A DNA stretch of 64,000 bases, taken from NCBI GenBank assembly GCA_024704765.1, contig JAKMXF010000188.1, forward strand, positions 1 through 64,000, read 5' to 3'. The number at the start of each line of letters is the position of its first letter. The first letter of the stretch is position 1. A program made the translations under genes and the position numbers. This document shows positions 5,447 to 60,842 of this stretch, piece after piece. The notes below the pieces were generated by a model that was not told where the DNA came from, ran no database searches, and worked only from the letters and a program-made list of their open reading frames with translations. This DNA is from Oopsacas minuta. Taxonomy: Eukaryota; Animalia; Porifera.

Positions 5447-7036
5447 ATGTCAGATGGGAATCTTTATCTGGGTTTTGACTTCAGCACTCAACAGTTGAAA
5501 GTGATAGCCATTAGAGAATCTCTTGAAATATTCTGTGAGGAATCTATCCAATTTGATGGAGATATTCCTGAGTACAAGACACAAGGAGGTGTACACAGGT
5601 ACCCTTACGAACCCCTAAAGGTAACTGCACCTCCTCTCATGTGGGTCAGTGCTCTCGATTTGATTTTAAAGAAACTAAAAGCTTCTAAGTTTCCTTTTGA
5701 ACGTGTTGCTTCTATTTCAGGAGCTGGTCAGCAGCACGGGAGTATCTATTGGTCAGTGGGAGGAGTAGAGTCGCTGAAAACACTGGACCCTGCTCTCCCT
5801 TTGAGAGATAATCTCAGAACTGCATTTGCTATAGAAAGTTCTCCTGTGTGGATGGATTCATCTACTGCTGTAGAGTGTAGAAATCTTGAGGAGTCTGTTG
5901 CAGGACCTCTCACCCTGTCAGCTATAACTGGGTCCCGTGGATATGAGCGGTTCACTGGGAATCAAATATCAAAGATTCTGAAAGGAACATCCAATAAAAT
6001 AGCGCGTATCTCTTTAGTCAGTAGTTTCGCTGCTAGTCTGCTGATAGGCTCAGTAGCTCCTATTGACTTGAGTGATGGATCAGGAATGAACCTGTTGAAT
6101 ATAAAGAGCAAATTGTGGGAGGAATGTCTTCTCGTGGCTAGCGGAGGAGAGAAGTTAGCTGAGATGTTGGGACCCCCTATACCAACTAACTCTATAATAG
6201 GAGAATTACATCCATATTATCAAGTTCGTTATGGGTTCAGTAAGAAGTGTAGAGTTGTCAGTTTTACTGGCGATAATCCCAGCTCCCTGGCTGGTCTTCC
6301 TGCTCATCCTGGTGATATTGTTATTAGTTTAGGTACCAGTGACACTCTGTTCCTCTCTCTCTCTGAACATGTACCCTCTCTGATGGGACATGTGTTCGTC
6401 AGTCCTCTAGACCCCTCCAACTACATGGGACTGCTCTGTTACAAGAACGGCTCGTTAGCTCGTGAAAGGGTAAGAGATATCTGTGCAGAGGGTAGCTGGG
6501 ATAAGTTCAATTCTCTGCTGGAGAAAACTCCACCTGGAAATAACGGTGTTATTGGAATGTACTTCTTTGACGCAGAGATTACCCCAGATATACAGGGACT
6601 ACATTTGTTTGATAGCAATTCTAACCCCATCACAGAGATTGCTCATGAACAGCAAGTGAGAGCTATCCTTGAAGGTCAGATTATTGCTAAGCTACTCCAC
6701 TCATCCTCTCTCGGCTACACCACGGGTCCGTCTAGTCGTGTGTTAGCTACTGGGGGTGCATCTAACAACCCTCACATACTCCAATTAATAGCTGATATAT
6801 TCAACTGCAGTGTATACATAGTAGATAGTACTAGCAATTCAGCTTGTTTAGGGGCTGCCATCAGAGCTATCTTCTCCACCAATGTAATACCTGATACTAC
6901 TTATCCGGAACTGGTGGAGAGAGCAGTCAAGTGTAGTTTCGCTACTGAGCCAAGAAGTGAGCTGGTATCTCTTTACAGAAATATGTTGCTGAGGTATAAA
7001 CAGCTGGAAGAATCCATTCTAGCAGCAAAATCATGA
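5447..7036 (+). CDS. XYLB: Xylulose kinase (FGGY family), single exon
   Basis: LYLGFDFSTQQLK, SISGAGQQHGSIYW, SPVWMDSST, GSRGYERFTGNQI, RISLVSSF, TGDNPSS, ISLGTSDT, LLCYKNGSLARE and TGGASNN motifs. First ATG is at 5447. Confidence 0.95.
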   Translation: MSDGNLYLGFDFSTQQLKVIAIRESLEIFCEESIQFDGDIPEYKTQGGVHRYPYEPLKVTAPPLMWVSALDLILKKLKASKFPFERVASISGAGQQHGSIYWSVGGVESLKTLDPALPLRDNLRTAFAIESSPVWMDSSTAVECRNLEESVAGPLTLSAITGSRGYERFTGNQISKILKGTSNKIARISLVSSFAASLLIGSVAPIDLSDGSGMNLLNIKSKLWEECLLVASGGEKLAEMLGPPIPTNSIIGELHPYYQVRYGFSKKCRVVSFTGDNPSSLAGLPAHPGDIVISLGTSDTLFLSLSEHVPSLMGHVFVSPLDPSNYMGLLCYKNGSLARERVRDICAEGSWDKFNSLLEKTPPGNNGVIGMYFFDAEITPDIQGLHLFDSNSNPITEIAHEQQVRAILEGQIIAKLLHSSSLGYTTGPSSRVLATGGASNNPHILQLIADIFNCSVYIVDSTSNSACLGAAIRAIFSTNVIPDTTYPELVERAVKCSFATEPRSELVSLYRNMLLRYKQLEESILAAKS

Positions 7037-7670
7037 TTATATACTATTCTGTGCAGAGCAGTTGTCACTTTATTTGTCTTATAATTATACCCAATTACAT
7101 ATTACTACATAGGTTGACCTAATGGTGTTCTAGGCAGTCTAGGGGTTTGCTTCATTTATTTAGGGTTTGCATAGACCCCCAATCTATTACACTCAAAATG
7201 CTGCATGCTGGTTACCACACAGTCTATAAGGTTTATACAGTTAACCTTCATGCTCCACAAACGGGTTGGAAATATTACTTGTTATCGTTACTGAGTTTTT
7301 CGCGTTTCAAATTGTATTTGGTTTATGACGTCACGCAAATTGTGTCTATTGTGTCGATAATTATTTTCCATGGTCTAGCGATTGTGCGCATTTCAATACC
7401 ATCCTCTACTGTTTATACCCTCCTACTAGGATTTGCTCCTAGTTTTCCATTATCCAAAAACCTAGTACACTTCCTATGGAAAAATTAGGAAGTGGCAAAA
7501 AGAGCCAAATTGTGTCAGATCATTAATCGTATGCGGAGGTGCAAATCTACAATTCACAATGAACCCATTGATCATAAACAGTGTCGGCTGTAGAGTAGGC
7601 ACGGAAAAATAATAAACTTCCCGCTAAGATCAATACTGAGCCTTATGCTAAAGTATAGTCAGCACAGTGA

Positions 7671-7866
7671 AAATCTAAAGTTACAACCTGTGCCGACAGC
7701 TTAGTCTATTAATAAAATTTGTTTAAAAAGTGGCACTATTAATTGGAGGCACATGTGTAATGGGATTAAACCTAACCTTTCATAGTGCCTCCAATTACTA
7801 GTGCCTCTTTTTAAACATATTTTATTAATAGACTAAGCTGTCGGCACAGGTTGTAATTTTAGATTT
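7671..7866. repeat. Inverted repeat, ~82-bp arms with ~32-bp spacer, part of a dispersed modular repeat
   Basis: 7671-7752 is the near reverse complement of 7785-7866. The right part plus downstream sequence recurs at ~61170-61445; the upstream module recurs at ~8360-8460. Confidence 0.85.
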
Positions 7867-8894
7867 TTTCCTCGCTCCGCTCGGATATAGAATCCATCAA
7901 ACACTATATTTACAATTTACTATGATCATACAGTCCATATAATGTTCAATTTGTTTGCAGTAATCATCGGTTGACTAAATAATAGAAGGGAATACAGGAG
8001 GAGATTTGATCGGTACAAATTCGGAATCAGCGTATTCAATTACCCCTTTTTTCTGTTCTACGATTATTCAAAAGTTACCAATATAAAATTCTAGAAGAGT
8101 ACGAAGGTGTAAAATTTCTTCTCTTTCGAAAGGTGTGAAAATTTTGGCCTTTCCTTTCATAATTTTTTTGCTAGAGGCCAGACCAAAGTTTGACCAGTGT
8201 GAAATAGTGACACTTGGTGTCCGGTTGATTAGCAAAGGGGAGAGTACACCCGACGAATATCTCAAATATTTTCACTATCATATAACACTTTGATTCTATC
8301 CAGTTTTGGCTGCAGGGGTTCAGGAAGAAATAAAAGTATAGGTAACCATTTCAATACTGGGCCACTTTAGTATAGTCAGCACAATAAATACAAAACTTTC
8401 CACTAAGATCAATACTGAGCTTTAAACTAAAGTATAGTCGTCACAGTAATAATGAAAATCAATGCAACATTGTTACATTGAAATAGAGCATGTTTTATTT
8501 CCATGCAACTTTTAACATACATGATGCAATAAAGTTGCATCGTGTATTGTGGGCTTAAAGATAAGGCTCGCTGAGCCAATTTTCGCTGAAACAGAGATAA
8601 AAGGAAGTGGATATATTACGAATGAGTAATTCTATAATCGCCAATGATAAGAAACTTGTACATTTTTACCCGAATATATGTGTTAATTGATATGGAACGA
8701 TTCATAAAAACCACATTTGTGAAATTTTGAGGTATTACAAAGTACGTTGCGTGTAACCTGAGAACATTTCGCACAGGTTACACACAATATACTTTTTAAT
8801 ACCTCCATTATTCTGATGTAATAGGTGTTACAGCTAATCTAATTATTAACACATTACATTATATTACTCAGTTTTACATTAGAATCCTACCATT

Positions 8895-10433
8895 ATGTCT
8901 GATGAGAAACCAGCTGATAAATGGCTACGTCCAGATATACCATGTAGATGTACATGGACTCTAGGGGAATCTAAGCCTTCTCCGCATAAATGCAAAGCTT
9001 TCCCCCGCGAAAAGAAGAATATATTCTCATCAGTTTTAGACGCTATTGGAGACACTCCTCTTGTGAGACTAGATCGAATTGCGAAGAGCTGTAATATGAA
9101 GTGTGAATTGTTAGGCAAATGCGAGTTCTTTAATGCTGGGGGATCTGTGAAGGATAGGATTGCTTTGAGAATGATTGAAGAAGCAGAGGAGGATGGTCAG
9201 CTGATGCAAGGTGACACGATTATAGAACCAACATCTGGAAACACTGGGATAGGTCTAGCTCTAGCATGTGCTATAAAAGGTTATAGATGTATCATTGTAA
9301 TGCCGGAGAAGATGAGTTTAGAGAAGGAAAACGTTCTGAGAGGCCTGGGAGCTGAGATTATAAGAACTCCAAACTCTGCTTCTTTTGATGAACCAGAGTC
9401 TCACATTAGAGTTGCTTGGGATTTGAAAAACAGAATCCCTCGAGCGCATATTCTAGACCAGTACAGGAACCCTTATAATCCTATCGCACACTATGATGGT
9501 ACTGCTAATGAGATACTTCATCAATGCGATAGTAAGATTGATATGGTAGTTATATCAGCAGGAACAGGAGGCACTATAACAGGGATTGGTAGGAAGATCA
9601 AGGAGAAACTACCTAACTGCCAGATTATAGGAGTTGATCCTGTTGGAAGTATCCTCGCTCTCCCAGACACACTCAATTCTACGATAAAATCCTACAAGGT
9701 AGAAGGGATTGGATATGATTTCATTCCTACAGTACTAGAGAGATCTTGTATTGATAAATGGATTAAAGTAGATGACAAAGAATCATTTTTAATGGCTAGA
9801 AGACTCATGCGTGAAGAGGGTCTACTATGTGGTGGTTCATGTGGCTCTGTTATGGTGGCAACTATCGAGGCTGCTAGTAGTCTGGGTTCTGGACACAGAT
9901 GTGTTGCTATATTGCCTGATTCTATTCGGAATTATATGACCAAACATTTGAATGAAGACTGGATGATAGATAACGAGTTTATGCAGTTATCACCTGATAA
10001 GTATCCTATATGTCTTCCTGAAAAAACTCTGAAAGATATAAGTATTTCTCCTCCAACCTTTCTAGAACATAATGCTAAGTGTATCGAAGCAATTAACATG
10101 TTCAAACAAACTGAACATAGCCAATATGTGATTATTTGTAATGAGAATAAGTTTATGGGTGTTGTCAGTGTTCATAGTATAAATAGTAAGCTATTCAATG
10201 GTCCAATTGGTGTCCAGGATCCTGTATCATTATTTATTGATAAGGACATCCTAACAGCACCTCTCTCCACATCCTTAAGGCTGATTATCCAGAAGATGAA
10301 GTCTACTCGTTCTCTGCTGGTTTATGATAGAGATATGACTGATGACGGAAATGTAACTAAGTTGTGTGTGAAGGGTATAGTTACTGAGTTTAACTTACTT
10401 GTCGAGTTTTCTGGAAATAATGCCAGTTTATAA
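8895..10433 (+). CDS. CBS: Cystathionine beta-synthase, single exon
   Basis: Heme motif CRCTWTLGE..SPH, PLP lysine GGSVKDRIA, EPTSGNTG, GTGGT, YKVEGIGYDFIP, LPDSIRNYMTK, and a diverged C-terminal CBS-pair region. Confidence 0.97.
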   Translation: MSDEKPADKWLRPDIPCRCTWTLGESKPSPHKCKAFPREKKNIFSSVLDAIGDTPLVRLDRIAKSCNMKCELLGKCEFFNAGGSVKDRIALRMIEEAEEDGQLMQGDTIIEPTSGNTGIGLALACAIKGYRCIIVMPEKMSLEKENVLRGLGAEIIRTPNSASFDEPESHIRVAWDLKNRIPRAHILDQYRNPYNPIAHYDGTANEILHQCDSKIDMVVISAGTGGTITGIGRKIKEKLPNCQIIGVDPVGSILALPDTLNSTIKSYKVEGIGYDFIPTVLERSCIDKWIKVDDKESFLMARRLMREEGLLCGGSCGSVMVATIEAASSLGSGHRCVAILPDSIRNYMTKHLNEDWMIDNEFMQLSPDKYPICLPEKTLKDISISPPTFLEHNAKCIEAINMFKQTEHSQYVIICNENKFMGVVSVHSINSKLFNGPIGVQDPVSLFIDKDILTAPLSTSLRLIIQKMKSTRSLLVYDRDMTDDGNVTKLCVKGIVTEFNLLVEFSGNNASL

Positions 10434-12643: not shown

Positions 12644-12769
12644 TTTGCTTTTTATCTCAGATTGTATTTAATACCAGTTAACACGTTCTTCTTGATTGGA
12701 ATATATAATTTGAGTATTTCTTAGTGATAATTATCATCATCAATATATGATTATTAATTAATAACGGGC

Positions 12770-46550: not shown

Positions 46551-47702
46551 CAGCTCCTTTTTACTGTGCCGACTATACTTTAGTATAGTAGCCCAGTATT
46601 GAAATAGTTGCCTATGTTTTCTATAACCGTAGACGGTGCATTGCCAAAACCATAATAGATTAAAGGCTAATACTTTCAGGATGCATGGACAATTTCTGTG
46701 CGGTGTGCACTGGGGGTCACGATTTTATATCTGACATATTGTTCCACTTTTGTGTCACTTTATAAAATTTCCCATAGGAATTGTATTAGGTTTTGGTTAA
46801 TATAATACAAGTGTGACCCAAAGTTCGGATATAGCGACAGATCGCAAATTACATTTTTCCCTAGCCCTAGCCCGATGGTGCGTCATTAAATCCAATCTTC
46901 ACTGTACCCAAAGCTAGAATATGATGTAACGACTATTAATGCATAAAGCCATAAACGTTTCCTCTGAAAATAGTTTAGAAAATAATCCATATTATTAAAT
47001 CTCAATTGTTGTCTGTCTGTCTGTCTGTTTGTTTATCAGTTGTCAAGGAAAGGATTTATGGTATAAATGCATTTGTGCTGTTGATAAATATGCCAATTGA
47101 GACTGTTTTCAATTGGAAATATAGAATAATTGCAAATTTAGATAGTTTTGAGACAGATAGAGATAGGTTCTGCAGGATAGTGGACGGATGTATGATGTAT
47201 GCTTAATGCTAGTGCATAGCCATAAATGTATTATAATTTCTATTTTGCATACGAAAATGTATCAATATATCAAATGCGAATCTATGAATTAGCCCAGTTT
47301 TTCTTAACATTTTCTAACTGTGGTACACTTATATCATCAAAAATCTTCAAGGCACACCTTGTCTAGGGTGAATTCTATTTTAGTATTACTGCGGCGGTGT
47401 AACAACTTCTTAAAAGTATTATATTTCTTAGGTAAATATTGGTGGTAGAGGAGCAGTTCTTCCTTAATTTAGCACTTTCATATTCAAAGTGCAACAAACA
47501 CTTGAAACCGTTTAAATTTCTTATATGCCAATTGAGAAACACTCTACCAGTATATACTCCCATCTACCTTAGATAGCTAACCGTGAACTAAATGATTGAA
47601 GAAACATGAACATCTGAAAAATAACAACAAACACAGATAAGAAAACAGAATCTCTGATCAAATAATAAATACTACAATGAAATACAAATGTTGGTCCTTG
47701 AT

Positions 47703-49060
47703 TCACTCATCTTTAATTTTGTCATCCTTCTTTCCTCTTCTATAGCAGCAACAATAGCATAGCCCAATCAGAAATGACAAAATAATAATAGATAAGGAGA
47801 GTAGAACCAATAGTGATGAATATACATCAAGAATATCCTGTATATTGCTGTCAAATGACATTCCATCATATCCACGAGATGGCAATCTCTCCAGTATCTC
47901 GACTACTTCAGGAGCCCCTTCAGCCTCGCTCATCAGCTGTTTAGCGTTCTCAACACAATCCTTATATATCTGATAATTCTGATCAAGTTCTAACAATTTG
48001 AGTGCAGAGCTGTCATGTCATTAAATTGTATACTACAACCTATTTCCTCCATAACGTTCGAGTTACAAACTGATCACCCATAAGCGGAAATAATACCAAG
48101 CGCGTAGTAGTTACTATACTCTCCATAACTAAGCTATAACCACCATGAGAAAGAAATATTTTAACTTGTTCAGTTTTCAAGAGAGCAATATGCGGAGCAT
48201 AATATACCAATTTCAAATGCTTCGGTAACCCAGCAATCATTTCTTCTATGTTATTCAATCCTAATATATTAACTGGTTCTAATATATTAACTAGCTCTAA
48301 TATATTAACTAGCTCTAATTGATGATCTATCCTCAAGGATAATATAACATTATAATCATTTTGATCACAAACCTGTTTATATAGCGAACTTAATTGAGCT
48401 GTGTTAAGTCTCACTATGGTACCAAACATATATAAACAACAGGTTGTGAAGGAACCTCTCTTAGGAATGTGATATATTCATCACTTAACTCTTCAGAAGC
48501 TTTGCCAGGAGGGATGTAACCAACTAACCATCTACCATCAGAGAGTCCTAAAGATGGAGCGACGAGTGGATGATAACTTTGGTAAACAATAGGAAACCGA
48601 CCAGCAATGCAATGAACATACTTTTTGGAGACAGTTCCTCTAAGCCAAGCAATCTTATTTGAGAGTCAAACAAATTCAAAGCAGGATAAAGCCCTAATAT
48701 AATGAACCTTTCAAAAAGCATATATATTAGTAATGATGGCAGAGAATTAGATAGAGAAATGAAAGGTAAACGGAAGAGGCACTGTTCCTGTGTACTTACA
48801 GTCAGGACATTTCTCCCTTGCAATAAATCCGATTTCGTAAGAATTTAACATTAGAGGGATATTGAACTTATCAGCTATATGAACTGAAGATATACTTATA
48901 AAAGAAGATAAGATGACGTCAATTTTATTTCCATTAAAGTAATCAAGATCATCTTGGTGAAGAGTTGTATGACTCTCAAACATTATTTGTATTCCCTTCA
49001 ATATGTTAAAAGAGCCTTCAAGATTCCTTTTCCCTATCACCTTTGATTAGTGTTTCATAA
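47703..49060 (-). pseudogene. UDP-glycosyltransferase (UGT/GT1) pseudogene, 5'-truncated
   Basis: PVVYI..GTIV, YAPHIALL..VKIFLSHGGYS..ESI..LVLFPLMGDQF (UGT signature), plus a C-terminal TM helix and basic tail. Split across four frames. Confidence 0.82.
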
Positions 49061-49940: not shown

Positions 49941-50124
49941 TATTTTGATTTTGTAAATGAACGTTTCTTAAATTCATGTTAATTTAATTAAAATTAGATA
50001 AAATATGAATAGTAAATAAAACGAAAAATTCTACAAAAATTAAAAAATTAAATATAATTATCATAAAAGAATGTAAATAAATAATTCATATTATCAAATG
50101 TTTTGGAATATGGATTATGGATAA

Positions 50125-53100
50125 CTATGTATCATCACTGTGTTTCATCTCCATTAGTTCAGAATGAACAGAAGATCCAGGCTCAGAAACTATCATAGAA
50201 ATTTTAGTTATGTTGTCAGAATCTCTTCTAAAAGGATTCAATCCAGACCTTAAAGGCTCATCTACCTCCTTGTTGTCACTATTAATATATTCAGTGAATG
50301 GATTCAGAGAGGGTTCGGATTTTGCTTCTGCGTATTGTCTATCTTCGTGAAGTTCGATATCAATAATTGAATAATTATTAGATTTTTCTTGTTCTGTTTG
50401 ATATTTCATGCCCAATTTGTCTGTATTGTGATCATATAATGGATTAAAGGAAGCATCATCTGGTTGTAGCGGATGGCCCACTGTTTCTGGCTGTTTTCGC
50501 AAATGAATAAACTTATAATCTTTCCTCTTGAAATAATTGTAAAGGAACCATATAGTGCAAGAGACAAATATAACCAGAAGGCATAAAATTGTACTAATAG
50601 AACCTGTAATGATAATAATTTGATAATTGGGACCCTCATATTTGGATGAAAGTACAGAAAAGCTAGTAGCATGTGTGCTGGAACAGCTGAAATATTCTGA
50701 ACTTTCTCCAGCATACCTTAGTCCAGAGGAAGTCCAAGTGTGTGTAGTATTATCCCAATACACACAAGTATATTTTAGTTTAGATTCTGTAGAAGTAAGT
50801 AGTTTTAGAGTTAGAGTAATAGGAGAAGAGAATGTGAGAGGTTCTCCCAGACTATTCTGTACAGAGATTACACCTGTGCTGATAGTAGAAGTAGTATCTA
50901 GATCAGGATTTAGAGAAGAAGATCCGATTGCTTGACCCAAATAGCGACTAAACACAACAGCAATTACAGGCACTTCTCCATGGGAATTGGAAAACAGACT
51001 CGATACCTCACTCCCAGGGATGGATATACTGTTTGGATAGAGACCTGTATCTTTGACAGCTGACATATCGTAATCTGGTAGTGTGACAGATTTTCCATCA
51101 GTCAGAGGAGTAATGTACATATGAATATTTTCTTCTGAGAAGAGAGCGTAGTCAGGATTAGTGTCGTAATTCTCTGCATTTAACTTTGCAATTCTCTCTA
51201 TCAGCTCGTATATTTCAATAGCTAGTGAAGAGTCAGTAGAGAGATAAAACAATTCAAGATTCCTCGAGTCGAGTATGCCAGATAACATGCACAGAACTCC
51301 AGGCGTTACCTGAGGAAGAAGATCTACTCGAGTAGATTCATTTTGACTGTCTACTGAATCCAGAACATTCACTATAACTTCAATCAATATCTCGATCTCA
51401 CTTGGGAAGAAAGTGGGACCAGACCCCGAATCAACTACACAGAAAATATTCTGCAGATTAGCAACGCTATCAATAACATCTTCAGGAGAGAGTATTAAAT
51501 CACCTTCTATATCCAGATCATCATAAACTTTCTTCATACAATTATTCACATCAGGTGGTAACCATGAGCCATCAGCTGAGCAGGAACGACTGGCATCACC
51601 GAATAGTAGAGAGTCAGAATCAGAGCAAGGAAGAACAACTGTATCACTATAAGCTGTATCAAGCCATAGGAAGTTGAGATAAAGCACTTCTCCACAGACA
51701 GGTGTACCAGTTGTTATGTCACACAGCTGTCCTTGATACCCGTCATCGCATTCACAAATATATTTATTAACTCCATCTGTACAACTACCATGATCACAGT
51801 TAACATCAAGACAGTCATCAATGTTGATATCACAAGTTTGACCTGTGAATCCTGGATTGCACTGACAGATGCTCTCAGCATAACCTTGAGAACACTCACC
51901 ATTCACACACACTCTACAGACATGATTATCTGTTGATAAGAATTGTTCTGAAGAGAATGGTCCAGGACCTGCACTGGTATAAGCTCGTATTTCTATTGTA
52001 TAATACGTATCAATGCTTAAACCTGTTAGATTTGAGTTAACAGTAGGTGTACTGATATTAATGAATACGAATTGGGTATCTGATGATGGCGTGAATCTAA
52101 GTTCATATAGTAGAATAAGTCCATTACGATGTATTCCGTCAATTTCTTCCCAAACCACGAATATCCAATTTTTCCCTGAAGAAGAATCTATAATTGAAGG
52201 AGCTACATTAGGAATTGATTCTGGCAACAAGAGAGAGGCTGAATCAGAAGCAGGACCGTTTCCAATTGCATTCAACGCAAACACATACACAGTGTATTCT
52301 ACTGCTGGATGCAAACCAGTCACTTCTAATGACGTCGTATTCAAACCAGTTTTTATTCTCAATGGAGACGTGTCATAGTTTGCACCTTGAGATACAATTT
52401 CATAAGCTAATAGCAATCCGTTGTGATGCTGTGCAAGAATTCCAACCCAACTAGCAATATATGAAGATGATGACGTAGCTACAACTATTACCTGAGTAGG
52501 AGCAGCAGTTGGCAATCCTTGTAGAGTTCTGACATAAATTGGAACAGATAAAGGACCAATTCCTCCAGAATTTTCAGCTGCTACTATGATAGAGTATACC
52601 TCGTCAGGCTTCAGAAGTGTGATTATGGTATCAGTTTTGAAATCATCAACAGATTGCTTTCCCTCACTTTTGTCATGTTCTTGTCCTTGATAGTAGACAA
52701 TATAATTTATCACAAGACTATTCTGATGGATAACAGGAATAGGATACCAGCTGACAAATATTGAGAGATAAGATTCAGGTGTACCAGTCACATTCTGTGG
52801 CGCTGCAGACGGAGGAAATGGAAGAGTTGTTTCATATAGTACTGAACTGAATGGTCCTATCCCAACACTAGTCCAGGCAGCAATACTATATTGATACTGA
52901 GTGTATTCCTCAAGATCATAAACTGAATATTCTGTCAAGTGTGTAGTGTAGGTAGTTGTGCTGATAGAAGTACCAAATTTAATTGAGTAATTAATTATGA
53001 TTCCGTTTTGTACAGAAGCTTCAGGAGGCTGGTATAACAGAGTGACATAAGCGGAGTAAGGAGTGGCAGAGATAGATGTGGGGGGACCAGTGGGTACATA

Positions 53101-56100
53101 TTCTGCTGTTATAAAGCTCGTAGAAGTAGGAGAACTGGTACCAGCTATGTTACTAGCTGTTACCTGTACGGTGTACTCTCTGTAGGGAAGTAGAGTCGAT
53201 AATTTGTGTGAGAGAGAGGAGAGGGTGATTGAGGTAACAAGGAGATTGTCTGCACTGGTGTAGATAGAGAGTGTGTAGGAGATAATAGGCCCATTTTGGA
53301 GGTGTATAGGAAGAGAATTAAACTGTACAAGAGCACTGGTGTTCGTTATGCTTTGAATGGGAAGTAGCTCAGGTCCTTGTGAGGGAGGTGACTGAAGAGT
53401 AGTGAAAGTGACATCAGAGAATGAGTAGGGACCTGTTCCATGAGTATTAATGACTGCTACTGCTAGTGAGTACTCTGTGTAGGGAGTGAGGCTAGGGATG
53501 ATAGCGTGAGGTGAGATGGAGGCGTATAAGAAGTAATTTGTAGTTTGAGTAGCAGTTACAAGAACACTGTAGCTCACAAACTCTCCATTGAGGGAAGAGG
53601 AAGGGATCTGGTCCCAGGAGAGGTTGACAGAGTTATGTGTGATCAGTAAGAGAGTAAGTTGTGTAGGTGCTTCGGCTGGTAGTGCTTGGTTGGTTGTAAT
53701 TATGATAACTGGAGTATAAGGACTATGTCCAATAGAATTGATAGCTCTGATCTGAATTGAATAACTAGTGTAAGGATGGAGAGACTGTAGAGTGTAGCTT
53801 GTTAGAAATGTCGATATTATCTGTTCAATAGATTCTGTTGAAGAAGCTACACTAATATCAAATCCTGTTATTGCTCCATTCTGATTAATAAGGAGAGGAT
53901 AATCATATTCCACATGTATTTGAGTTGTTGACAACACATACGCCTTGAAATCTGTGGGAGGACTAGAGGGTAGAGCTTCTTCAGTTCTTACACTAATCAC
54001 GTTGGAGTAAGGACCTGATCCCACAGAAGTATATACTCTAATTCTGAAATGGTAGACTACATCTTCTTCCAGACCATAAATAGTACATTGTAGCTCGGAT
54101 GCGGATATGTTCGTACTAACGTGAGTGTGTGATAGGAATGTTGCTTCGTTAAAATAGGTAATTTCGTAGTAAGTCAACTCTCCATTCTGTTGATCAACTG
54201 ATATTGCTAACCATGATAACGTAATACTGACAGTTGCTGGAATACCTGTAAAATTGTCCGGAGCTTCTCCAGGAGATGACTCGGCAGTTAAGACAATCAA
54301 CTTATCATTTGGTCCGTAGCCAATAGAATTTCTTGCTTGGATTAGGATAGAATAATTGTGATGCTCTTCCAAACCTGTGAACTGATAGAAAAATGTTGTT
54401 CCACTGACCTCAGCTTGAGAGATCTCTACGTTAGTTTGCAAATCAGTTGCTACTAAGTAGAACGCTATTATTACTCCATTTCGTTCTCCGATAAGGGGGA
54501 GTGTCCATGAAAATGAAAGAGAAGTAGAATCTCTGTTTTCAACTATAAACATTGTTGGAGCGCCATCAGGTAGAATTTCTAATGTAGTCTCTGTCGCGGA
54601 AATACAAGGACCTACTCCCATACTATTTGCTGCACAGATGTAGATAACATACTCGCTACCTTCACTCAGATTCTCTAGAGTAGCACTAGTTGTTGGTAGT
54701 GTTATATTTATCCATTCAGTATCAATACTAACTCCCCTATACGCTAACCTGTAACCTGTTATGATTCCGTTCTGCTCACTCAGAGGAGGAGAGTCCCAGC
54801 TGATAGACAGACTGGTATTCAGGATGGTGGTGAATTGGATATTCTGAGGTGTGTCAGCAGGAGCTATCTCGTATGTGGTCGTAGTGATGACGTCAGTGTT
54901 AGGACCACTTCCAACACTCGTACTCACAGCTGCTTGAATGTTGTAAAAAACACCTTCTTGCAATCCAATCAGTGTCTCATCGACAGGTGACAAATAATTT
55001 GTAGTGTATGGCGTTACCCTCACAGTCCGTGTAGATGTGTCAACACTTATACCTGTGTATGTGACAGTATAATAGGTGATGATACCATTAAGAGAATATG
55101 TGTCATTCGGAGGACGGAGTGTTAGTGTGATTGTGGTGTGAGTGATGGTAGTGACAGAGAGGAGAGGAGGAGACGTGGGAGTGCTCTCATGGGTGGTGAT
55201 AGTTGTCGAAGAACTGTAAGGTCCCTTCCCAACAGAAGTAGAAGCTGCTACACTGAATGTGTACACTGTGAATGGGTTCAGATTCGTAATTACGGAGAAA
55301 GTAGAAGAAGCGCTTACAATGTGTTCTGTAACGTTGATTAGAATGACGTAATCGACTATAATGCCATTTTGAGATTCCCTGTCAGGAGCAATCCACGAGA
55401 GACTTATCTCTGTGTCACTGATAGTTAAGACAGTGACAATAGTTGGAGACTGACTAGGTATATCTTGATTCGTTCTCACTATCACAGTATTGGATTCTCC
55501 ACTAGATAGACTTCCTATAGAACGGACGTATAGCTGATAGTTTCTGTAAGGCAGTAGTCTGGTGATATTATAATTTAAAGCAGTTGTATTTCTGTAATCT
55601 ATATACGAGGGCGTAGAGAATGTAATATCACGGTAATACACTACATAATAGAGAGAGACGGAGTGTGTGTTTGGAATGAAAGTTGTCAGCCAATTGATAT
55701 GTATAGATCTGCTAGTCAGTGCAGAACCTGCCATTAATGTATCAAACGTTACAATACTGCAAGCGATATATGTCACTAAGTAGTAATTAATCATGCATGA
55801 ACACTCGTAGCTTCCAACAGTATTTTTGCAGATCTGGGTACATTGGTCTGTGTTTAAGGTACACTCATTAACGTCTACACAACTGTGATCAGCTACGTTC
55901 CATTCATATCCCTCGGAACATGATCCTAAAGAAAAAAGATTATATATAGCTGAGCTATAGCATAGTACAGTTTTTTGCAATACAAAAACCCCATAGCCTC
56001 ATTCGAAAAGGTGACTTCCATTAATCCGAAAAAATAACCTTTCCTCGAAGATAGAAAAGCTAATACATAAAAACTGTACTATAGTATAGCTGAGCTATAT

Positions 56101-59100
56101 CTTAGTTATTTGAAGAAATGAAAATAGTACAATTTATCAGATGCAAGCCTGTGAATGGCAGCTGATGTAGGTTAGATCTGAATTTGGCATTTTACATGTA
56201 TATATTATAATAAAGATGGTATTCAGATGTCAAACCACTTCAAATCGAATCATTGTACTCCAAATAATAGCAGTAAACTACAGTCAACTCCCGTTATATC
56301 GAAGCTCAATGGACCGCGATAATTACTTCAATATAATAGGAGTATATATATAACATTTATGTAACTTTGGCGGTTGATTGGAGTATATGTGTACAATTTA
56401 AGACTTCGATATAGGGAGTATTTTGATGTATCCGTTTTCGATATAAAGGGAATTCACTGTATAAGAACCTCAAGCAAAATCAATAATGAGATACGAAGTA
56501 AATACGAAAACATAGAACATCTTACCGACATCGCAATCTGTTCCGCTAAACCCTGTATTACAAATTTTTCCACCTGTTACAGAGTTACAAGTGTAGTGAC
56601 CGCTTGTACTATCTTCAGCTATACAATACACTGTACAATATGTAGAATAGTAGTCTTCATCACAGGTAAACTTGTATTGTAGGCTAGTTGTAGCCACGAA
56701 TGATGCACGTAATCCTTCGTAGGTTAGGGTAGAACCTAAGGTTGCTTGCTTTGTAGCTGAAATTCGAATATTTACGTGATCTATGTCGTCATCTCCTCCA
56801 TTCCAGAATCCATCTGCATCAATTGCAACTATTGATATCTCAAAATTCCCCTAAATTGATAATATTCATTGAGTATTATATAATTTTCGCAACCAAATAA
56901 TATCCAAAAAATAACCGCACTCGCATAATATATCATGGACTTCTAACTACCTGTGACAGTCCACTCGTATTCAACTCAGACGGACTCTATACCACCAGGG
57001 ATGCGCAAAACTCACCTTTTAGGCCACTTGAGTGCGGCCGATAGCAGCAAATCTATAAATTTTTAGGAGGACAATTTGAAAATTTGGTGTCATTTGAGGA
57101 TTTCAATTTAACATGGGTTTGTAATAATAGTTATGTATATTATTGTTTTGACAGTTAAAATTCCCATTATACTTTTATTCCATTATACTTCTATTCAATC
57201 AACTATTCTGGTCACCACTATTAGCAATGTGTACACAGTTTACTAGTTTCTTTGTTCTTCAACATTACCAAAATATATCATCAAAAGTTCAATATATTTA
57301 CGCTTGATCATTGTGCGTTTATGCTACCTGTCTGACAAGTGGCAAATAATTCTGGTGAGGTCCCCTTTTCCCACTTTCCACCCTGTTCTTGAGACTTTAC
57401 ATCTTTAAATCTCTCCCACGAAAGGGCCTCATAATTTCCACAAATAGCTAGTAATCGCTGGGTGCCAGGTCGGGACTTTAAGCGGGATGAGGTAAACATT
57501 TGAAGTCTAGATCATTTATGGCCTCAAGAGTACCAAATCATCTCATTCTATCATTCTTCATATTGCATTGCATTATTTTATGTATGAAAATTGCGATTGG
57601 CAAAGAACCTATTTGGCAATGCAATGGACGACAAAATATTTTATTGAAATTTTGGACAGCCCCTTGTAGTTGTAGACGAATAGTTTCAAACGGAACCGGC
57701 TTTTTAGATGCGGCCGGTAATGATATGTTCTTGCGTAAATGTGGCCGGGATGCTGCAAAAGTGCGAACCCCTGCTCTATACCAAGTTAGGCCAGGGTGTT
57801 ATAGTTCATATCTCAAAAACCGTCAGTTCTTTTGATATAAATATATTATTATCGAATAGGAACTCATGTACGGGGAACACTATGATCATATTGGCATACT
57901 TGAAATGTGTTGTGGTTTGTGATTTTTTGCGGTTTTTACACATTTTACCAGCATAGGGATATGTAAAAGTAGCTCAACAATATTAAATTGTATATTTTGG
58001 ACCAAATAAATATGCTATTGATATTTAACAATACATAATGTTTATCTCGAAAAATAGTCAATTAATAGGAGCATTTGTTGACATTTGCTAAGTAAGCAAT
58101 CAGATTACGTCAATTCGATTTGGAATTAGTTTATAAAGATAAATTTATGTATTATTAAAAATCAATAACATATTTATTCAGCCCAAATGGTACAATTTAA
58201 TATCGTCGCTACTTATAAATATCCCTATGTTGGTAATGAAAAAATGTGTGAAAACCGCAAAACTCCCAAACCACAAACATTTCAAGTATGCCAATATGAC
58301 CCTCGAAATCCCCATACATGACTTCCTATTTAACAATAATATAGCTAATACTAGGGATTAGGCATGCACCGGCTCCATAAATTCTTGATCCGGTGCACCT
58401 GTCTTGAGTATCCAAATGCTTTATATAATCACTGAAATTCTGAATGTATCATAATTATATTGACTAATATGTAATACACACAGTAGAATGTCAGTTATCC
58501 GAACATGATGGGACCGAAGAAGGTTCATATAATTGATACTAATACCCTAAATGTCAATTATATGAACCTTCTTCGCGACCTGTTTTGACGATCGGAGAAT
58601 GATCGCCGATCATTTTATAAACAGTGATCGAGTGTAAGATCACGATCATTTTTGGCAGACAGAATTAAAAAAAGCATATAGGTGATGTACTCGGCACATC
58701 GTATCTCGAATGTTTTCAAAATAACAACTAGTGTTTACACATGAACAGTAGCGGTGTCAGGACTAATTGGGGATGGGGGGCTTGAGTGCCACCATATTTT
58801 TTGAGAAATTTATGATCGAATTGTTTCGATTTTGTGTTTGTTTCGAGATGTGCTTAGTTGTTACGTACATGTTTTTGTAGAATTATTTTTCTAGATGTCT
58901 AGTATTGCTAATATTCCGTCTTAATTCTCCGAAAATCTTGTTTCTTGCTCTGTTTATGAGTTCTTGTGTAATACTGTATTTGAATATTTTTCTTTAATAA
59001 TTTTGTAACTCAATTATTTCCTTACATGCCAATTTGGCAGCTCGATAAACCGCTTTCATTCAAAGCATCAAGTAACATATTTTAGGAAGTTATAAGGCAA

Positions 59101-60612
59101 TAAGTAGTGTAATTTAATTGACATGCCGAACGAGCCTAGGCCCCGTGAAAAGCGTGTCGCCACGCCCAGCCCCTTCGTTCGCCAAACCCTGGCGCCGCCC
59201 CTGCACATGAGTACCTTGAAAGTGCGAAATTCGGAATCTGCGTACTTGATTACCCCGGTATAACCAGTAAAACCAAGTTTCTTAAACTAATCAGAAACTT
59301 ATTTACTGTATATTTTTGTTAGTAAACATGATAAATACATAGTTATGCTATAGCATGGAATTACGAGATTCGGGTTCAATATAAATCCTTTCCTTGACAA
59401 CGAACAACGGACGGACGGGCACACAAACAAAGTAGCACTTTAATAATATAGATTTTGCATAGATATCAACCTGGCAAGTACACACTAATCGAAAGTACTT
59501 CTCGATCCTAATAAGTACTAACCGAGCTCTGCTGTATATGAAACATTATATATACTTATTTAACCAAATAGTGCCAGTCATAGCCTATGTGCTAGTTTAT
59601 TGTATTTAATTCAACTTACATCGAATGAGTTTTCTGTAGAATATTCGACAGGGTTTGTTACTTCACCGAGAGTAGTACCAAATTCCACAAAATCTAAGTC
59701 GGTATAATAATCTGTGATGATCTCGGGAGGAGTTGTTGAACCTGAGTTACAAGCAAATGTGTAAGTGCTGTGTCCATATCTTAGACAAATTTTGAAAAAT
59801 GGATCGCATGGGTTGTAACAAAATAAACAGTGGTCGCAATATGCACCATTAACATCTCTTCCCTTTGTATTGAAGTCTATGTAATTGATAGTGAGTTTTC
59901 CTGTCCCAGTTGTTCCTTTCTGTAAGAGTACAGTAAATAAGTAATGAATCTTTATTATGGACAGGGGCATAGGCCCTCTCTAGGGAAGGGGCGGTCGCAA
60001 TCCCGGTGTAGCAGCCTAGATTAACCTCCCGCCAGAATATACCCGGGTATAATCTGGGCTAGCCCAGATTATACCCCAGGGTATAAACTAGGCTAGCCTA
60101 TATTAACCCCGGGGCTTAATCTGGCCTAGCCCAGTTTATACCTGGGGGTTAATCTAGGCTAGCCCAGACTATACCCGGGGTTAAACTGGGTGGGGAGGCT
60201 AATCTAGGCTGTTACACCGGCACGAGCCTGAGCCCGAACGGGCCTCGGACTTATGATAGTTGGGCCGGGCCGGGCTTATTGCCTATACTTTAGGGTTCCG
60301 AATAAACCGGCCATTAAATTTTGAAATAATTTGGTTTAGTTCCATATATCTATATTATTAAATTTGAGAATAGTACAATTAAGTGTATGTTTTGCTAAAA
60401 TTTCCTTTATATTAGAGTATGTATACGTAGTATACCAAGAGTTACCACCTACTTACTAATCCCTTCTGATTTTCCCAATTTACAAATGGGAAAAACTATC
60501 CCATGTAGGTAGTTATAGATATTCAGGATACAGATATACATAATATGATTTAACTTACAAGGTAAAAGGCTGACAAAATAAGGCAGCAAGCAAATAGTAT
60601 CGTCAACTTCAT
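50125..60612 (-). CDS. ~2159-aa type-I membrane protein: SP, MNNL/C2, DSL, 2 EGF, 13 FN3, 2 EGF, HRM, GAIN/GPS, 1 TM, tail. Exons 60612-60559, 59919-59620, 56850-56526, 55925-50125
   Basis: Signal exon MKLTILFACCLILSAFYL. MNNL: NTKGRDVNGAYCD..CDPFFKICL and FEISIVAIDAD. DSL: YKFTCDEDYYSTYC..GHYTC..KIC..GFSGTDC. HRM: CGEVLY..LWLDT..VVLPC..ASRSCSADGSW..DVNNC. GPS: CVYWD..WTSSG..CSSTHATSFSVL. GT-AG phases 0, 0, 1 give 6480 nt. Confidence 0.85.
56281..56459. mobile_element. pogo-like MITE in intron 3 of the DSL-GAIN gene
   Basis: TA-cagtcaactcccgttatatcgaa ... ttcgatataaagggaattcactg-TA; a related left end lies at ~49356. Confidence 0.82.
57886..58299. repeat. Imperfect inverted repeat (~80-bp arms) in intron 2
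   Basis: tcatattggcatacttgaaatgtgttgtggttt..cagcatagggatat pairs with atatccctatgttgg..aaaccacaaacatttcaagtatgccaatatga. Confidence 0.8.
59226..59453 (+). mobile_element. 3' half of the Helitron/Helentron-like repeat
   Basis: gaaattcggaatctgcgtac..ttacccc and ccttgacaacgaacaacggacggac..ttaataatatagat match 20913-21241. Confidence 0.6.
60007..60216. mobile_element. Ginger1-like MITE, second copy, in intron 1 of the DSL-GAIN gene
   Basis: TIRs tgtagcagcctagattaacctccc / gggaggctaatctaggctgttaca; CCGG at 60003-60006 and 60217-60220. Confidence 0.88.
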
Positions 60613-60842
60613 AGAAATTTCCTAAATTAAACAATTGTAAAAATACACTAAATTCTATATTGTAATTGCCAACAATGAACATTTTGATACACTTTAGAGC
60701 TTTTAAGCAGTGCTAAGTATATTATGATCTCAAAAGTTTTTCCATGTACCTCGTATCATTCAGGGTTCCCCATGTTTAAACACCCAGCAAATCAGAGAGA
60801 AGAGTAAGTAAAATGCCATATTGCCCGACTGTTAGCACATAT

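What the first reader, a model, noticed from the sequence alone, without database searches (positions are those of the whole stretch)
50125..60612. Chimeric Notch-ligand / adhesion-GPCR-stalk protein: MNNL-DSL-EGF head on 13 FN3, HRM, GAIN/GPS and a single TM helix
Three small exons absent or fragmentary in the ORF track encode a signal peptide, the C2/MNNL domain and a canonical DSL domain. They splice in phase onto a 5.8-kb exon with EGF, 13 FN3 (PTPRQ/sidekick style), 2 EGF, HRM, GAIN/GPS, one TM helix and a ~137-aa tail. Canonical Delta/Jagged ligands have only EGF (plus VWC) before the membrane. GAIN domains are known from adhesion GPCRs and polycystin/REJ proteins. I know of no described protein combining them. 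Hypothesis: a very long-reach Notch ligand with a built-in force-sensitive release point, coupling two mechanotransduction modules. A syncytial or mesh-like tissue could use such a ligand, or it could act as a shed decoy.
Basis: partly seen in the sequence, partly recalled or inferred. Interest (0 to 1): 0.93.

Follow-up and report, generated by a model that had tools for sequence, protein, structure and literature searches.

The report
Notch-ligand head on adhesion-GPCR stalk
A glass-sponge gene, confirmed by RNA, joins the receptor-binding tip of a Delta-type Notch ligand to the long stalk and GAIN module of an adhesion GPCR that has kept only one membrane helix; it sits in databases under misleading names and I found no description of it in the literature.

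Summary
Four minus-strand exons (60612-60559, 59919-59620, 56850-56526, 55925-50125) give a 2159-aa ORF. All introns are GT..AG, and cDNA-like contigs of run X4 carry all three predicted junctions.

The domains are a signal peptide, C2/MNNL, DSL, cbEGF, 13 FN3, 2 EGF, HormR, GAIN/GPS, one TM helix and a 134-aa tail.

The organism is the glass sponge Oopsacas minuta. The protein is already in NCBI ("PTPRQ-like isoform X5", with a doubtful 88-aa N-terminal extension) and in UniRef ("Delta-like protein"). Two paralogs share the architecture. Three other sponge assemblies hold members with the same exon plan.

Everything from the cbEGF to the cytoplasmic tail is homologous to a giant FN3-rich 7TM adhesion GPCR that neighbours a family member in another species. 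The family is therefore an aGPCR paralog that lost TM2-7 and carries a Delta head.

Function is inferred. The Jagged-1 F207 equivalent, needed for Notch binding, is Ser here. The GPS reads H-A|T and has lost one disulfide. Notch ligand activity and a "mechanical fuse" are therefore plausible but unshown.

First readers noted the same architecture on other pieces of this genome. I rate it a new variant of known kinds.

The parts
60559..60612 (-). Exon 1: ATG plus an 18-aa hydrophobic signal peptide, phase 0. An in-frame TAG lies 9 nt upstream of the ATG.
   Evidence: joint 59919/60559 in X4, depth 110. Paralogs P0002 and P0003 start at the same Met.
59620..59919 (-). Exon 2: N-terminal part of the C2/MNNL domain (model aa 19-118).
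   Evidence: Pfam MNNL 23.1 bits. PDB sequence hits DLL1 2e-16 and fly Delta 1e-12. AF2 model pLDDT 86.5.
56665..56850 (-). Exon 3, first part: C-terminal part of the C2 domain, including the conserved acidic loop (D-x-D ... DDDID).
   Evidence: Alignment A1 has nearly invariant D111 and D113. Foldseek matches to Jagged/DLL C2-DSL structures.
56526..56664 (-). Exon 3, second part: DSL domain (aa 181-226), ending at a phase-1 GT donor directly after the last DSL cysteine.
   Evidence: Pfam DSL 43.1 bits. Six invariant Cys in A1. Joints in X4.
55750..55925 (-). Start of exon 4: partial cEGF plus a calcium-binding EGF. Homology to the giant 7TM aGPCR begins here.
   Evidence: Pfam EGF_CA 32.7 bits. 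48% identity to the EGF_CA-FN3 junction of the L002 aGPCR.
51928..55749 (-). 13 FN3 domains (aa 286 to about 1559).
   Evidence: Pfam fn3, 13 stretches, 399 bits. 40-43% identity over about 1300 aa to the FN3 stalk of the L002/L005 aGPCR.
51703..51924 (-). Two EGF domains.
   Evidence: Pfam hEGF, EGF and EGF_Teneurin.
51529..51696 (-). HormR (HRM) domain.
   Evidence: Pfam HRM 18.9 bits, below its cut-off. A profile of A2 aligns it to the HormR of ADGRL3, CELSR1 and BAI3. Foldseek top hits are HormR-GAIN structures.
50644..51528 (-). GAIN domain: helical subdomain A and beta subdomain B with the GPS. The H-A|T triad lies at 50665-50673. The second and fourth GPS cysteines are replaced by Leu and Ser.
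   Evidence: Pfam GPS 31.6 bits, A2 alignment. H-A-T is conserved in all 10 single-TM members.
50530..50619 (-). Single transmembrane helix. It aligns with TM1 of the 7TM paralog.
   Evidence: Hydropathy scan finds one TM after the GPS, against seven in P0011. A2 alignment. ADGRL3 alignment running into TM1.
50125..50529 (-). Cytoplasmic tail (134 aa) and stop codon. It carries NPLY (50434-50445) and two NPF motifs 22 aa apart (50296-50304 and 50230-50238).
   Evidence: The motif order NPLY...NPF...NPF...(NPxY) is shared with the C-terminal tail of the 7TM aGPCR P0011. RNA contigs are missing over 50125-50342.

Best explanation
[quoted passage not shown] It belongs to a family seen in O. minuta and in three sponge metagenome assemblies that I take to be other glass sponges; those species were not identified.

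Shown: the family is a paralog of a giant FN3-rich adhesion GPCR (EGF_CA repeats, 22 FN3, EGF, GAIN, 7TM, tail). Two things distinguish it from that receptor:
- It has one TM helix, aligning with TM1 of the receptor, fused to a tail with the same motif order as the receptor's C-terminal tail.
- The N-terminal EGF_CA repeats are replaced by three small exons encoding a signal peptide and a Delta-type C2/MNNL-DSL cassette. This cassette joins at a phase-1 exon boundary directly after the last DSL cysteine.

Inferred: the product is a type-I membrane protein that holds a Delta-like head several tens of nanometres from the membrane on a rod of 13 FN3, EGF, HormR and GAIN domains. Its most likely job is to present that head to a Notch-type EGF-repeat receptor, together with the membrane lipid that the C2 domain would bind, on an apposed cell or syncytial strand. 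The NPxY and NPF motifs in the tail would couple it to endocytic adaptors. It would thus be a non-canonical, long-stalk DSL ligand.

The GAIN domain is inherited from the receptor ancestor. Whether it is cleaved is unknown, so a role as a release point is only a possibility. [quoted passage not shown]
For: Gene model and expression.

Organism and database identity: (100% match to an O. minuta protein).

Head:
- Pfam MNNL and DSL.
- phmmer against PDB gives DLL1 2e-16, fly Delta 1e-12, and DLL4, Jagged-1/2 and Serrate.
- AF2 pLDDT 86.5, and the top 24 Foldseek hits are all Notch-ligand C2-DSL structures.
- The C2 acidic loop is conserved.

Stalk:
- 40-43% identity over about 1300 aa to the L002/L005 aGPCR ectodomain.
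- 40% identity over HormR-GAIN-TM1 to its 7TM part, P0011, which has a 7tm_2 hit of 72.6 bits.
- The lost Cys pair is shared with P0011.
- Tail motifs occur in the same order as in P0011.
- The giant aGPCR has no MNNL/DSL within 10 kb upstream.

Family and constraint:
- Two O. minuta paralogs.
- The same three-exon head plan in L001 and L003.
- Synteny with ADP_PFK_GK, a tubulin-binding gene and the giant aGPCR in two samples whose glucokinase-like genes are 76% identical, so they are different species.
- The head is as conserved as the stalk: DSL 89%/70%, FN3 87%/69%, GAIN-B 89%/76%.

Biological context: glass sponges have Notch, furin, ADAM10/17 and gamma-secretase (PMC5684314).
Against: - No binding or activity data exist.
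- The four residues I recall, uncited, as the conserved face of the Jagged-1 DSL (F199, R201, R203, F207) read Y, I, E, S here. Only P0003 keeps the F207 equivalent. F207A abolishes Notch-1 binding in Jagged-1 (PMC3888931).
- There are no EGF1-2/DOS repeats after the DSL.
- The nearest heads outside the family are lineage-specific multi-DSL proteins of cnidarians and molluscs of unknown function, not canonical Delta.
- The tail motifs are inherited from the aGPCR, so they are not evidence of adaptation to ligand function.
- RNA contigs do not cover the last ~72 codons.
Confidence: 0.55

Rival explanations
1. The protein is a bona fide trans-activating Notch ligand, and its GAIN domain is autoproteolysed. 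The non-covalent junction between the N- and C-terminal fragments then acts as a force-limited release point (a mechanical fuse or shedding device) during endocytic pulling on Notch.
For: - The C2-DSL head is genuine.
- His(-2) and Thr(+1) of the GPS and the Stachel-like TSFSVL strand are invariant in all 10 single-TM members and in 7TM relatives.
- The tail carries endocytic NPxY and NPF motifs.
- Notch and its processing machinery are present in glass sponges (PMC5684314).
Against: - P-1 is Ala, whereas the consensus is Leu/Ile, and one of the two conserved disulfides anchoring the cleavage loop is lost (consensus from PMC13197933). Many aGPCRs with a GAIN domain are not cleaved.
- The F207 equivalent is Ser and both arginines are lost in this copy.
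- There are no cleavage, force or signalling data.
Confidence: 0.15
2. The protein is a gene-encoded 1TM partner of 7TM adhesion GPCRs. Like the 1TM isoforms of Drosophila Cirl, it would pair through its homologous FN3/GAIN ectodomain with the giant 7TM paralog. It would then tune or target that receptor's signalling, with the DSL head supplying ligand specificity.
For: - Stalk and GAIN are homologous to a 7TM aGPCR that lies two genes away in two species.
- There is a precedent: 1TM Cirl isoforms heterodimerise with the 7TM form through ectodomain-driven interactions (PMC13197933, citing Bormann 2025).
- The tail motifs are shared with the 7TM paralog.
Against: - There is no evidence of interaction.
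- In the window itself no aGPCR gene lies next to the gene. Downstream ORFs are UDPGT-like and others.
- The idea does not explain why a Delta head is conserved.
Confidence: 0.12
3. The protein is a non-Notch adhesion or recognition molecule, or a Notch decoy or cis-inhibitor. In the first case the head has been co-opted as a generic lipid- or EGF-binding tip of a sidekick/PTPRQ-like FN3 rod. In the second case it binds Notch without activating it.
For: - The DSL contact face varies among family members: IAEDSTS, QANDDTF, RARDDST, VAHDDTS.
- The nearest outside heads belong to non-canonical multi-DSL proteins.
- The C2 acidic loop, used for lipid and Ca binding in Jagged-1 (PMC3888931), is conserved.
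Against: - Every C2-DSL head with a known partner binds Notch (established knowledge).
- The head is under the same constraint as the rest of the protein.
- P0003 keeps the key Phe.
Confidence: 0.16
4. The finding is an artefact. Either the small exons belong to another gene, or the locus is a pseudogene or an assembly chimera.
For: - The NCBI model carries an implausible 88-aa integrase-like N-terminal extension.
- RNA contigs have a hole at the 3' end.
Against: - Three exact splice joints appear in cDNA-like contigs.
- The ORF is intact over 6.5 kb.
- The same exon plan occurs in two paralogs and in other species.
- DNA-like runs cover the locus evenly.
Confidence: 0.02

Closest known systems
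DSL Notch ligands (Delta/DLL1/DLL4, Serrate/Jagged, LAG-2)
   Same: - Signal peptide followed by an N-terminal C2/MNNL domain and a DSL domain with all six cysteines.
- Type-I single-pass topology.
- Sequence and fold matches to DLL1, DLL4, Jagged-1/2, fly Delta and Serrate.
- A conserved acidic loop in the C2 domain.
   Different: - There is no run of EGF repeats between the DSL and the membrane. In its place are one cbEGF, 13 FN3, 2 EGF, HormR and GAIN.
- There is no DOS-type EGF1-2.
- The Jagged-1 F207, R201 and R203 equivalents are Ser, Ile and Glu.
- The tail resembles an aGPCR C-terminus rather than a Delta tail.
Adhesion GPCRs (class B2), especially the giant FN3-rich hexactinellid aGPCR in L002/L005 (upstream ORF plus P0011)
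   Same: - Homologous from the cbEGF through the FN3 rod, EGF, HormR and GAIN/GPS to TM1, and in the order of tail motifs.
- The same lineage-specific GPS with one disulfide lost.
- Profile and fold matches to CELSR1, ADGRL1/3, BAI2/3 and GPR110.
   Different: - One TM helix instead of seven, and no 7tm_2 hit.
- The N-terminal EGF_CA repeats are replaced by a C2-DSL head.
- With no 7TM bundle, the Stachel strand cannot act as a tethered agonist in cis.
1TM isoforms of Drosophila Cirl/latrophilin (Bormann et al. 2025, cited in PMC13197933)
   Same: A full aGPCR ectodomain with a GAIN domain anchored by a single TM helix.
   Different: The Cirl 1TM forms arise by intron retention from a 7TM gene. 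Here the 1TM form is a separate gene, fixed in several paralogs and species, and it carries a DSL head.
LAT-1 (latrophilin) and LAG-2 (DSL ligand) cis complex in C. elegans (PMC12255766)
   Same: A DSL ligand and an aGPCR GAIN-containing ectodomain act together on the same cell surface. In the sponge the two parts are joined in one polypeptide.
   Different: - In the worm they are two proteins that bind non-covalently through the GAIN and RBL domains.
- The sponge protein has no RBL domain.
- No functional link has been shown in the sponge.
PTPRQ / sidekick-type FN3 rod proteins (the NCBI name of this protein)
   Same: A long run of FN3 domains followed by one TM helix.
   Different: There is no phosphatase domain and there are no Ig domains. 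The NCBI name reflects the FN3 repeats only.
Polycystin-1 / REJ family (GAIN proteins that are not GPCRs)
   Same: A GAIN/GPS module directly ahead of the first TM helix in a protein that is not a 7TM receptor.
   Different: There are no REJ, PLAT or PKD-channel domains, and there is one TM helix instead of eleven. The sequence relatives are aGPCRs, not PKD1.

Membership tests
DSL Notch ligands | N-terminal C2/MNNL domain directly ahead of the DSL domain | tested here: met
   Pfam MNNL 23.1 bits against a cut-off of 22.5. phmmer against DLL1 aligns residues 37-206, E 2e-16. AF2 plus Foldseek gives a top 24 made entirely of Notch-ligand C2-DSL structures.
DSL Notch ligands | DSL domain with six conserved cysteines | tested here: met
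   Pfam DSL 43.1 bits. C163, C172, C176, C188 and C197 are invariant and C206 is nearly invariant in A1.
DSL Notch ligands | Tandem EGF repeats filling the stretch from the DSL to the TM helix | tested here: not met
   One cbEGF is followed by 13 FN3, 2 EGF, HRM and GAIN.
DSL Notch ligands | [quoted passage not shown] | tested here: not met
   The window protein reads Y, I, E, S at these positions. F207A abolishes Notch-1 binding (PMC3888931). Paralog P0003 keeps both Phe but not the Arg residues. L001 keeps both Arg but not F207.
DSL Notch ligands | Binds and trans-activates a Notch receptor | not testable with these tools
   This needs binding and reporter assays.
Adhesion GPCRs (class B2) | GAIN domain with a GPS directly ahead of the first TM helix | tested here: met
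   Pfam GPS 31.6 bits. Profile against PDB gives CELSR1 5e-15 and ADGRL3 1e-11. Foldseek top 10 are all aGPCR ectodomain structures containing a GAIN domain, although the model's pLDDT is only 59.5.
Adhesion GPCRs (class B2) | Seven-helix 7tm_2 domain | tested here: not met
   There is no 7tm_2 hit. Only one hydrophobic segment follows the GPS, against seven in P0011. The stop codon comes after a 134-aa tail, and downstream ORFs are unrelated. No splice joint leaves the tail.
Adhesion GPCRs (class B2) | GPS consensus CxCxH-(L/I)|(S/T) with two disulfides | tested here: inconclusive
   His(-2) and Thr(+1) are present, P-1 is Ala, and the C2-C4 pair is replaced by Leu and Ser. The same changes occur in the 7TM relatives P0011 (H-T|T) and L004 (H-A|T). 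Cleavage itself was not testable.
PTPRQ-like receptor phosphatases (the NCBI name) | Intracellular phosphatase domain | tested here: not met
   No phosphatase family appears in the Pfam scan. The tail is 134 aa of low-complexity sequence with NPxY and NPF motifs.
Polycystin-1/REJ GAIN proteins | REJ and PLAT domains and an 11-TM channel-like region | tested here: not met
   No REJ, PLAT or PKD_channel hits. One TM helix.

The most novel reading that the evidence does not exclude
The fusion is a natural 'Rosetta stone'. In C. elegans the latrophilin ectodomain (GAIN plus RBL) binds the DSL ligand LAG-2 in cis and boosts Notch signalling. Glass sponges have written a DSL head and an aGPCR HormR-GAIN stalk into one polypeptide, and possibly also into true 7TM aGPCRs (locus L004). 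This would point to an ancient functional coupling between aGPCR ectodomain mechanics and Notch-ligand activity. The GAIN module would set or limit the force that a DSL ligand can apply, or release the ligand under load. It would be a second mechanosensitive element in the Notch ligand-receptor bridge, adapted to a largely syncytial body.
Probability: 0.15. Interest if true: 0.85.

Novelty: new variant of a known kind. Interest (0 to 1): 0.66.

Why it matters
Notch ligands are among the most architecturally conservative signalling proteins in animals. From sponges to humans they read C2-DSL-EGFn-TM. The literature on glass sponges lists one canonical Delta.

This family shows that the C2-DSL cassette can be shuffled as an exon module onto a completely different ectodomain. 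It also gives the first case I could find of a DSL head in the same chain as a GAIN domain.

It documents a gene-encoded single-TM derivative of an adhesion GPCR whose TM helix aligns with TM1 and whose tail keeps the receptor's motif order. That bears on the current interest in 7TM-independent ("N-terminus-only") aGPCR functions.

Together with the reported LAT-1/LAG-2 interaction, it offers a testable link between two force-dependent signalling modules.

It also corrects database names ("PTPRQ-like", "Delta-like protein") and a doubtful N-terminal extension in the deposited model.

Tried and rejected
1. This gave 11 in-frame stops. Shifting each junction by one base gave a clean ORF.

2. Search for the same architecture elsewhere.
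- HMMER of the head against 1.84 billion representatives gave 898 hits.
- None of the best 150 has detectable GAIN, FN3-stalk or tail homology.
- The long hits I scanned are multi-DSL/EGF proteins of cnidarians, molluscs and annelids.
- A word-index search restricted to long proteins found only the O. minuta pair and a mollusc EGF protein.
- The ESM Atlas gave only weak hits (0.68) to SUSD1, CELSR and REJ clusters.

3. Test of a DSL-headed 7TM aGPCR through annotated O. minuta homologs of the L004 receptor. The search returned only unannotated ENA ORFs, so the splice between the L004 head and the receptor remains unverified.

4. A 7TM continuation downstream of the stop codon. I rejected it: there are no joints, and the downstream ORFs are UDPGT-like or have no Pfam match.

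5. A DSL head on the giant aGPCR. I rejected it: an opposite-strand gene lies 600 bp upstream, and tblastn finds no hit within 10 kb.

6. The AF2 model of HormR-GAIN had low confidence (pLDDT 59.5) because the alignment held only 11 sequences. I used it only as a fold-level check.

7. I could not retrieve the canonical O. minuta Delta or Notch for a direct comparison of interfaces.

Full report
**1. The observation**

The region 50125-55980 holds one 1951-codon minus-strand ORF.
- 60612-60559 (54 nt)
- 59919-59620 (300 nt)
- 56850-56526 (325 nt)
- 55925-50125 (5801 nt)

Together they make 6480 nt and 2159 codons with one terminal stop. Each intron starts with GTAAG and ends with AG. My first attempt, one base off, gave 11 stops.

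Four public runs from one sample hold the locus. X1-X3 have even depth over exons and introns, so they are DNA-like. X4 has depth 0-10 in non-repeat intron sequence and 100-350 in exons. X4 alone contains contigs with three joints: 55924/56525 (+1), 56849/59619 (+1) and 59919/60559. All have CT..AC ends on the + strand, which is GT..AG on the gene strand, at depths 159, 99 and 110. All three predicted junctions are therefore confirmed at the transcript level.

No joint leaves the tail towards downstream sequence. Downstream minus-strand ORFs are UDPGT-like or unmatched, not 7TM.

Two points stay open:
- X4 contigs are absent over 49949-50342, the last ~72 codons. The tool warns that such holes prove nothing.
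- The spliced contig ends 11 nt upstream of the ATG, so the transcript start is not fixed.

**2. Domains**

Pfam gives MNNL 23.1 bits (cut-off 22.5) in exon 2 and DSL 43.1 bits in exon 3. In exon 4 it gives EGF_CA, 13 fn3 stretches (399 bits), EGF/hEGF, HRM 18.9 bits (below its cut-off) and GPS 31.6 bits.

The head (aa 19-228) hits solved Notch ligands by sequence:
- DLL1, 2e-16 over 170 residues
- fly Delta, 1e-12
- DLL4, Jagged-1/2 and Serrate

An AlphaFold2 model built on a 33-sequence alignment has pLDDT 86.5. Its 24 best Foldseek matches in the PDB are all C2-DSL-EGF structures of Jagged, DLL, Delta and Serrate, with E between 1e-14 and 4e-11.

For the membrane-proximal part, a profile of 11 family sequences hits only adhesion GPCRs in the PDB:
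- CELSR1, 5e-15
- ADGRL3, 1e-11, aligned from HormR through GAIN into TM1
- ADGRF1, ADGRD1, BAI3 and others

The AF2 model is weak (pLDDT 59.5). It still shows a helical subdomain, a beta subdomain and a terminal helix, and its ten best Foldseek hits are all aGPCR ectodomain structures containing a GAIN domain, most of them HormR-GAIN.

A hydropathy scan finds one TM segment after the GPS in every family member and seven in the true receptor P0011.

**3. Organism, database status, family**

A search with the GAIN-to-tail region returns a 100% identical protein of Oopsacas minuta, a hexactinellid or glass sponge. NCBI names it "Phosphatidylinositol phosphatase PTPRQ-like isoform X5" and UniRef names it "Delta-like protein". 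DSL, GPS, EGF_CA and fn3 are already in its precomputed Pfam list.

That model (P0001, 2247 aa) equals mine plus 88 N-terminal residues that look like a retroelement integrase fragment. Paralogs P0002 (87% identical in the GAIN-to-tail region) and P0003 (52%) start at the Met I use. An in-frame TAG sits 9 nt upstream of that Met. I therefore regard the extension as doubtful.

Further members, known only as ORF-level calls, come from three ENA metagenome assemblies. In L001 and L003, tblastn finds an MNNL exon, a DSL exon and the giant exon in the same order, at 44-58% identity to the window protein.

L003 and L005 share the gene order of family member, ADP_PFK_GK, tubulin-binding gene, giant aGPCR. 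Their glucokinase-like proteins are 76% identical, so these are different species, and the family's position is conserved between them. Their family members are 50% identical.

Within O. minuta the head is as conserved as the stalk:

| Region | W-P2 | W-P3 |
|---|---|---|
| DSL | 89% | 70% |
| FN3 | 87% | 69% |
| GAIN-B | 89% | 76% |
| Tail | 67% | 26% |

**4. Origin**

In L002/L005 a 2604-aa ORF carries 6 EGF_CA repeats, 22 fn3 and an EGF. It runs into a 1072-aa ORF (P0011) with EGF, GAIN/GPS, 7tm_2 at 72.6 bits and a long tail. This is one giant adhesion GPCR.

The window protein aligns to it as follows:
- From its first residues after the DSL, where the cbEGF-FN3 junction is 48% identical.
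- Through about 1300 aa of FN3 at 40-43% identity.
- Into HormR-GAIN-TM1 at 40% identity.

The tails share the motif order NPLY ... NPF, 20-22 residues, NPF ... NPxY.

The receptor has no MNNL or DSL within 10 kb upstream. An opposite-strand gene ends 600 bp ahead of it.

The simplest history is a duplicated aGPCR gene that lost TM2-7 and carries a C2-DSL cassette in place of the N-terminal EGF_CA repeats. The DSL exon ends in phase 1 directly after its last cysteine, and homology to the receptor starts at the next exon. That is the signature of exon shuffling.

A 50%-identical head also lies 2 kb upstream of an HRM-GAIN-7tm_2 ORF in L004. It is intronless there and ends at a GT donor in the same phase. 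A phase-compatible acceptor lies ahead of the receptor ORF, yet that receptor's GAIN is only 22% identical to ours. Head and receptor homologs co-occur on three contigs. This suggests the cassette has moved between different GAIN proteins, but I have no RNA evidence for that gene.

**5. How it probably works**

Shown: an expressed mRNA whose predicted product is a type-I membrane protein with a Delta-type head, a long FN3 rod, HormR-GAIN, one TM helix and a tail with NPxY and NPF motifs.

Inferred: the head is presented far from the membrane and binds a partner on an apposed surface. Every C2-DSL head with a known partner binds Notch (established knowledge). Glass sponges have Notch, furin, ADAM10/17 and gamma-secretase (PMC5684314). 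The C2 acidic loop, which in Jagged-1 binds Ca and phospholipid and is needed for activation (PMC3888931), is conserved. NPxY and NPF are classical docking motifs for PTB-domain and EH-domain endocytic adaptors (general knowledge). Ligand endocytosis supplies the pulling force in Notch signalling (general knowledge).

Four observations count against a canonical mechanism in this particular copy:
- The Jagged-1 DSL face F199/R201/R203/F207 reads Y/I/E/S here. F207A abolishes Notch-1 binding (PMC3888931).
- The face varies among members. P0003 keeps both Phe, L001 keeps both Arg, and none keeps all four.
- No DOS-type EGFs follow the DSL.
- The tail motifs are inherited from the receptor ancestor.

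On the "release point": the GPS has His(-2) and Thr(+1) and a Stachel-like TSFSVL strand, invariant in all ten single-TM members. However, P-1 is Ala, and the second and fourth GPS cysteines are replaced together by Leu and Ser. The consensus is CxCxH-(L/I)|(S/T) with two disulfides anchoring the loop (PMC13197933). The same peculiarities occur in the 7TM relatives P0011 and L004. They are therefore a lineage trait, not decay, but cleavage cannot be judged from sequence.

**6. Comparison with the known, and novelty**

The protein fails one structural criterion of a DSL ligand, the EGF stalk, and the interface criterion. It fails the 7TM criterion of an aGPCR. It is neither PTPRQ, since it has no phosphatase, nor PKD1-like.

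The closest functional analogies are two:
- The 1TM isoforms of Drosophila Cirl, which partner the 7TM form.
- The cis complex of C. elegans latrophilin with the DSL ligand LAG-2, mediated by GAIN and RBL (PMC13197933, PMC12255766).

No paper in the searchable library contains both "DSL domain" and "GAIN domain". The O. minuta genome paper does not mention the family. Two papers state that glass sponges have a single Delta. The recent GPCR survey that included the O. minuta proteome has no occurrence of 'DSL' or 'Notch' in its text; a survey of 7TM receptors would in any case not list a single-TM protein (my inference).

The sequence is already deposited and auto-annotated, and domain shuffling is common in sponges. 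I therefore class it as a new variant of known kinds rather than categorically new.

First-reader notes of this scan report the same architecture on other pieces of this genome. That agrees with the paralogs found here.

Noticed in passing
window 60613-60800 and upstream; protein P0001 residues 1-88: The deposited NCBI model adds 88 N-terminal residues that resemble a retroelement integrase fragment, placed ahead of the signal peptide. Paralogs start at the Met at 60612, and an in-frame TAG lies 9 nt upstream of it. The extension is probably a gene-model error.
   Followed up: partly
window 55943-56485 (intron 3) and 59925-60286 (intron 1): Contig depth reaches the thousands in all four runs, so these are high-copy repeats. 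Intron 1 holds four tandem copies, about 33 nt apart, of a palindromic GGGTATAATCTGGGCTAGCCCAGATTATACCC-like unit. Intron 3 holds a 43-nt inverted repeat.
   Followed up: partly
L004:10001-15040 (ENA ERZ25072730): An intronless MNNL-DSL ORF, 50% identical to the window head, ends at a phase-1 GT donor. It lies 2 kb upstream of an HRM-GAIN-7tm_2 ORF that has a phase-compatible acceptor at 12723. A second similar aGPCR lies just upstream at 6840-9251. This may be a DSL-headed true 7TM adhesion GPCR, but there is no RNA evidence.
   Followed up: partly
L005:10001-20994 (= L002:226-11219, ENA ERZ25069837): A giant adhesion GPCR with 6 EGF_CA, 22 FN3, EGF, GAIN (GPS H-T|T) and 7tm_2, plus a tail with NPxY and NPF motifs. 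It lies two genes from a DSL-GAIN family member, and the same arrangement is partly visible in L003.
   Followed up: yes
window 49949-50342: The cDNA-like run X4 has no contigs here, over the last ~72 codons and the start of the 3' UTR, although the rest of exon 4 is deep. The DNA-like run X1 covers it. The cause is unknown and could be a filter, allelic divergence or a different 3' end.
   Followed up: no
proteins P0021, P0022, P0034 (hits): These proteins carry 11-13 tandem DSL domains, for example Nematostella 'protein draper' XP_032232843. They are the closest non-sponge relatives of the head, and their functions are unknown.
   Followed up: partly
window 47585-48766, minus strand: An expressed neighbour with X4 depth up to about 850. 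The ORF at 48040-48429 matches UDP-glycosyltransferase (UDPGT, 25.7 bits).
   Followed up: no
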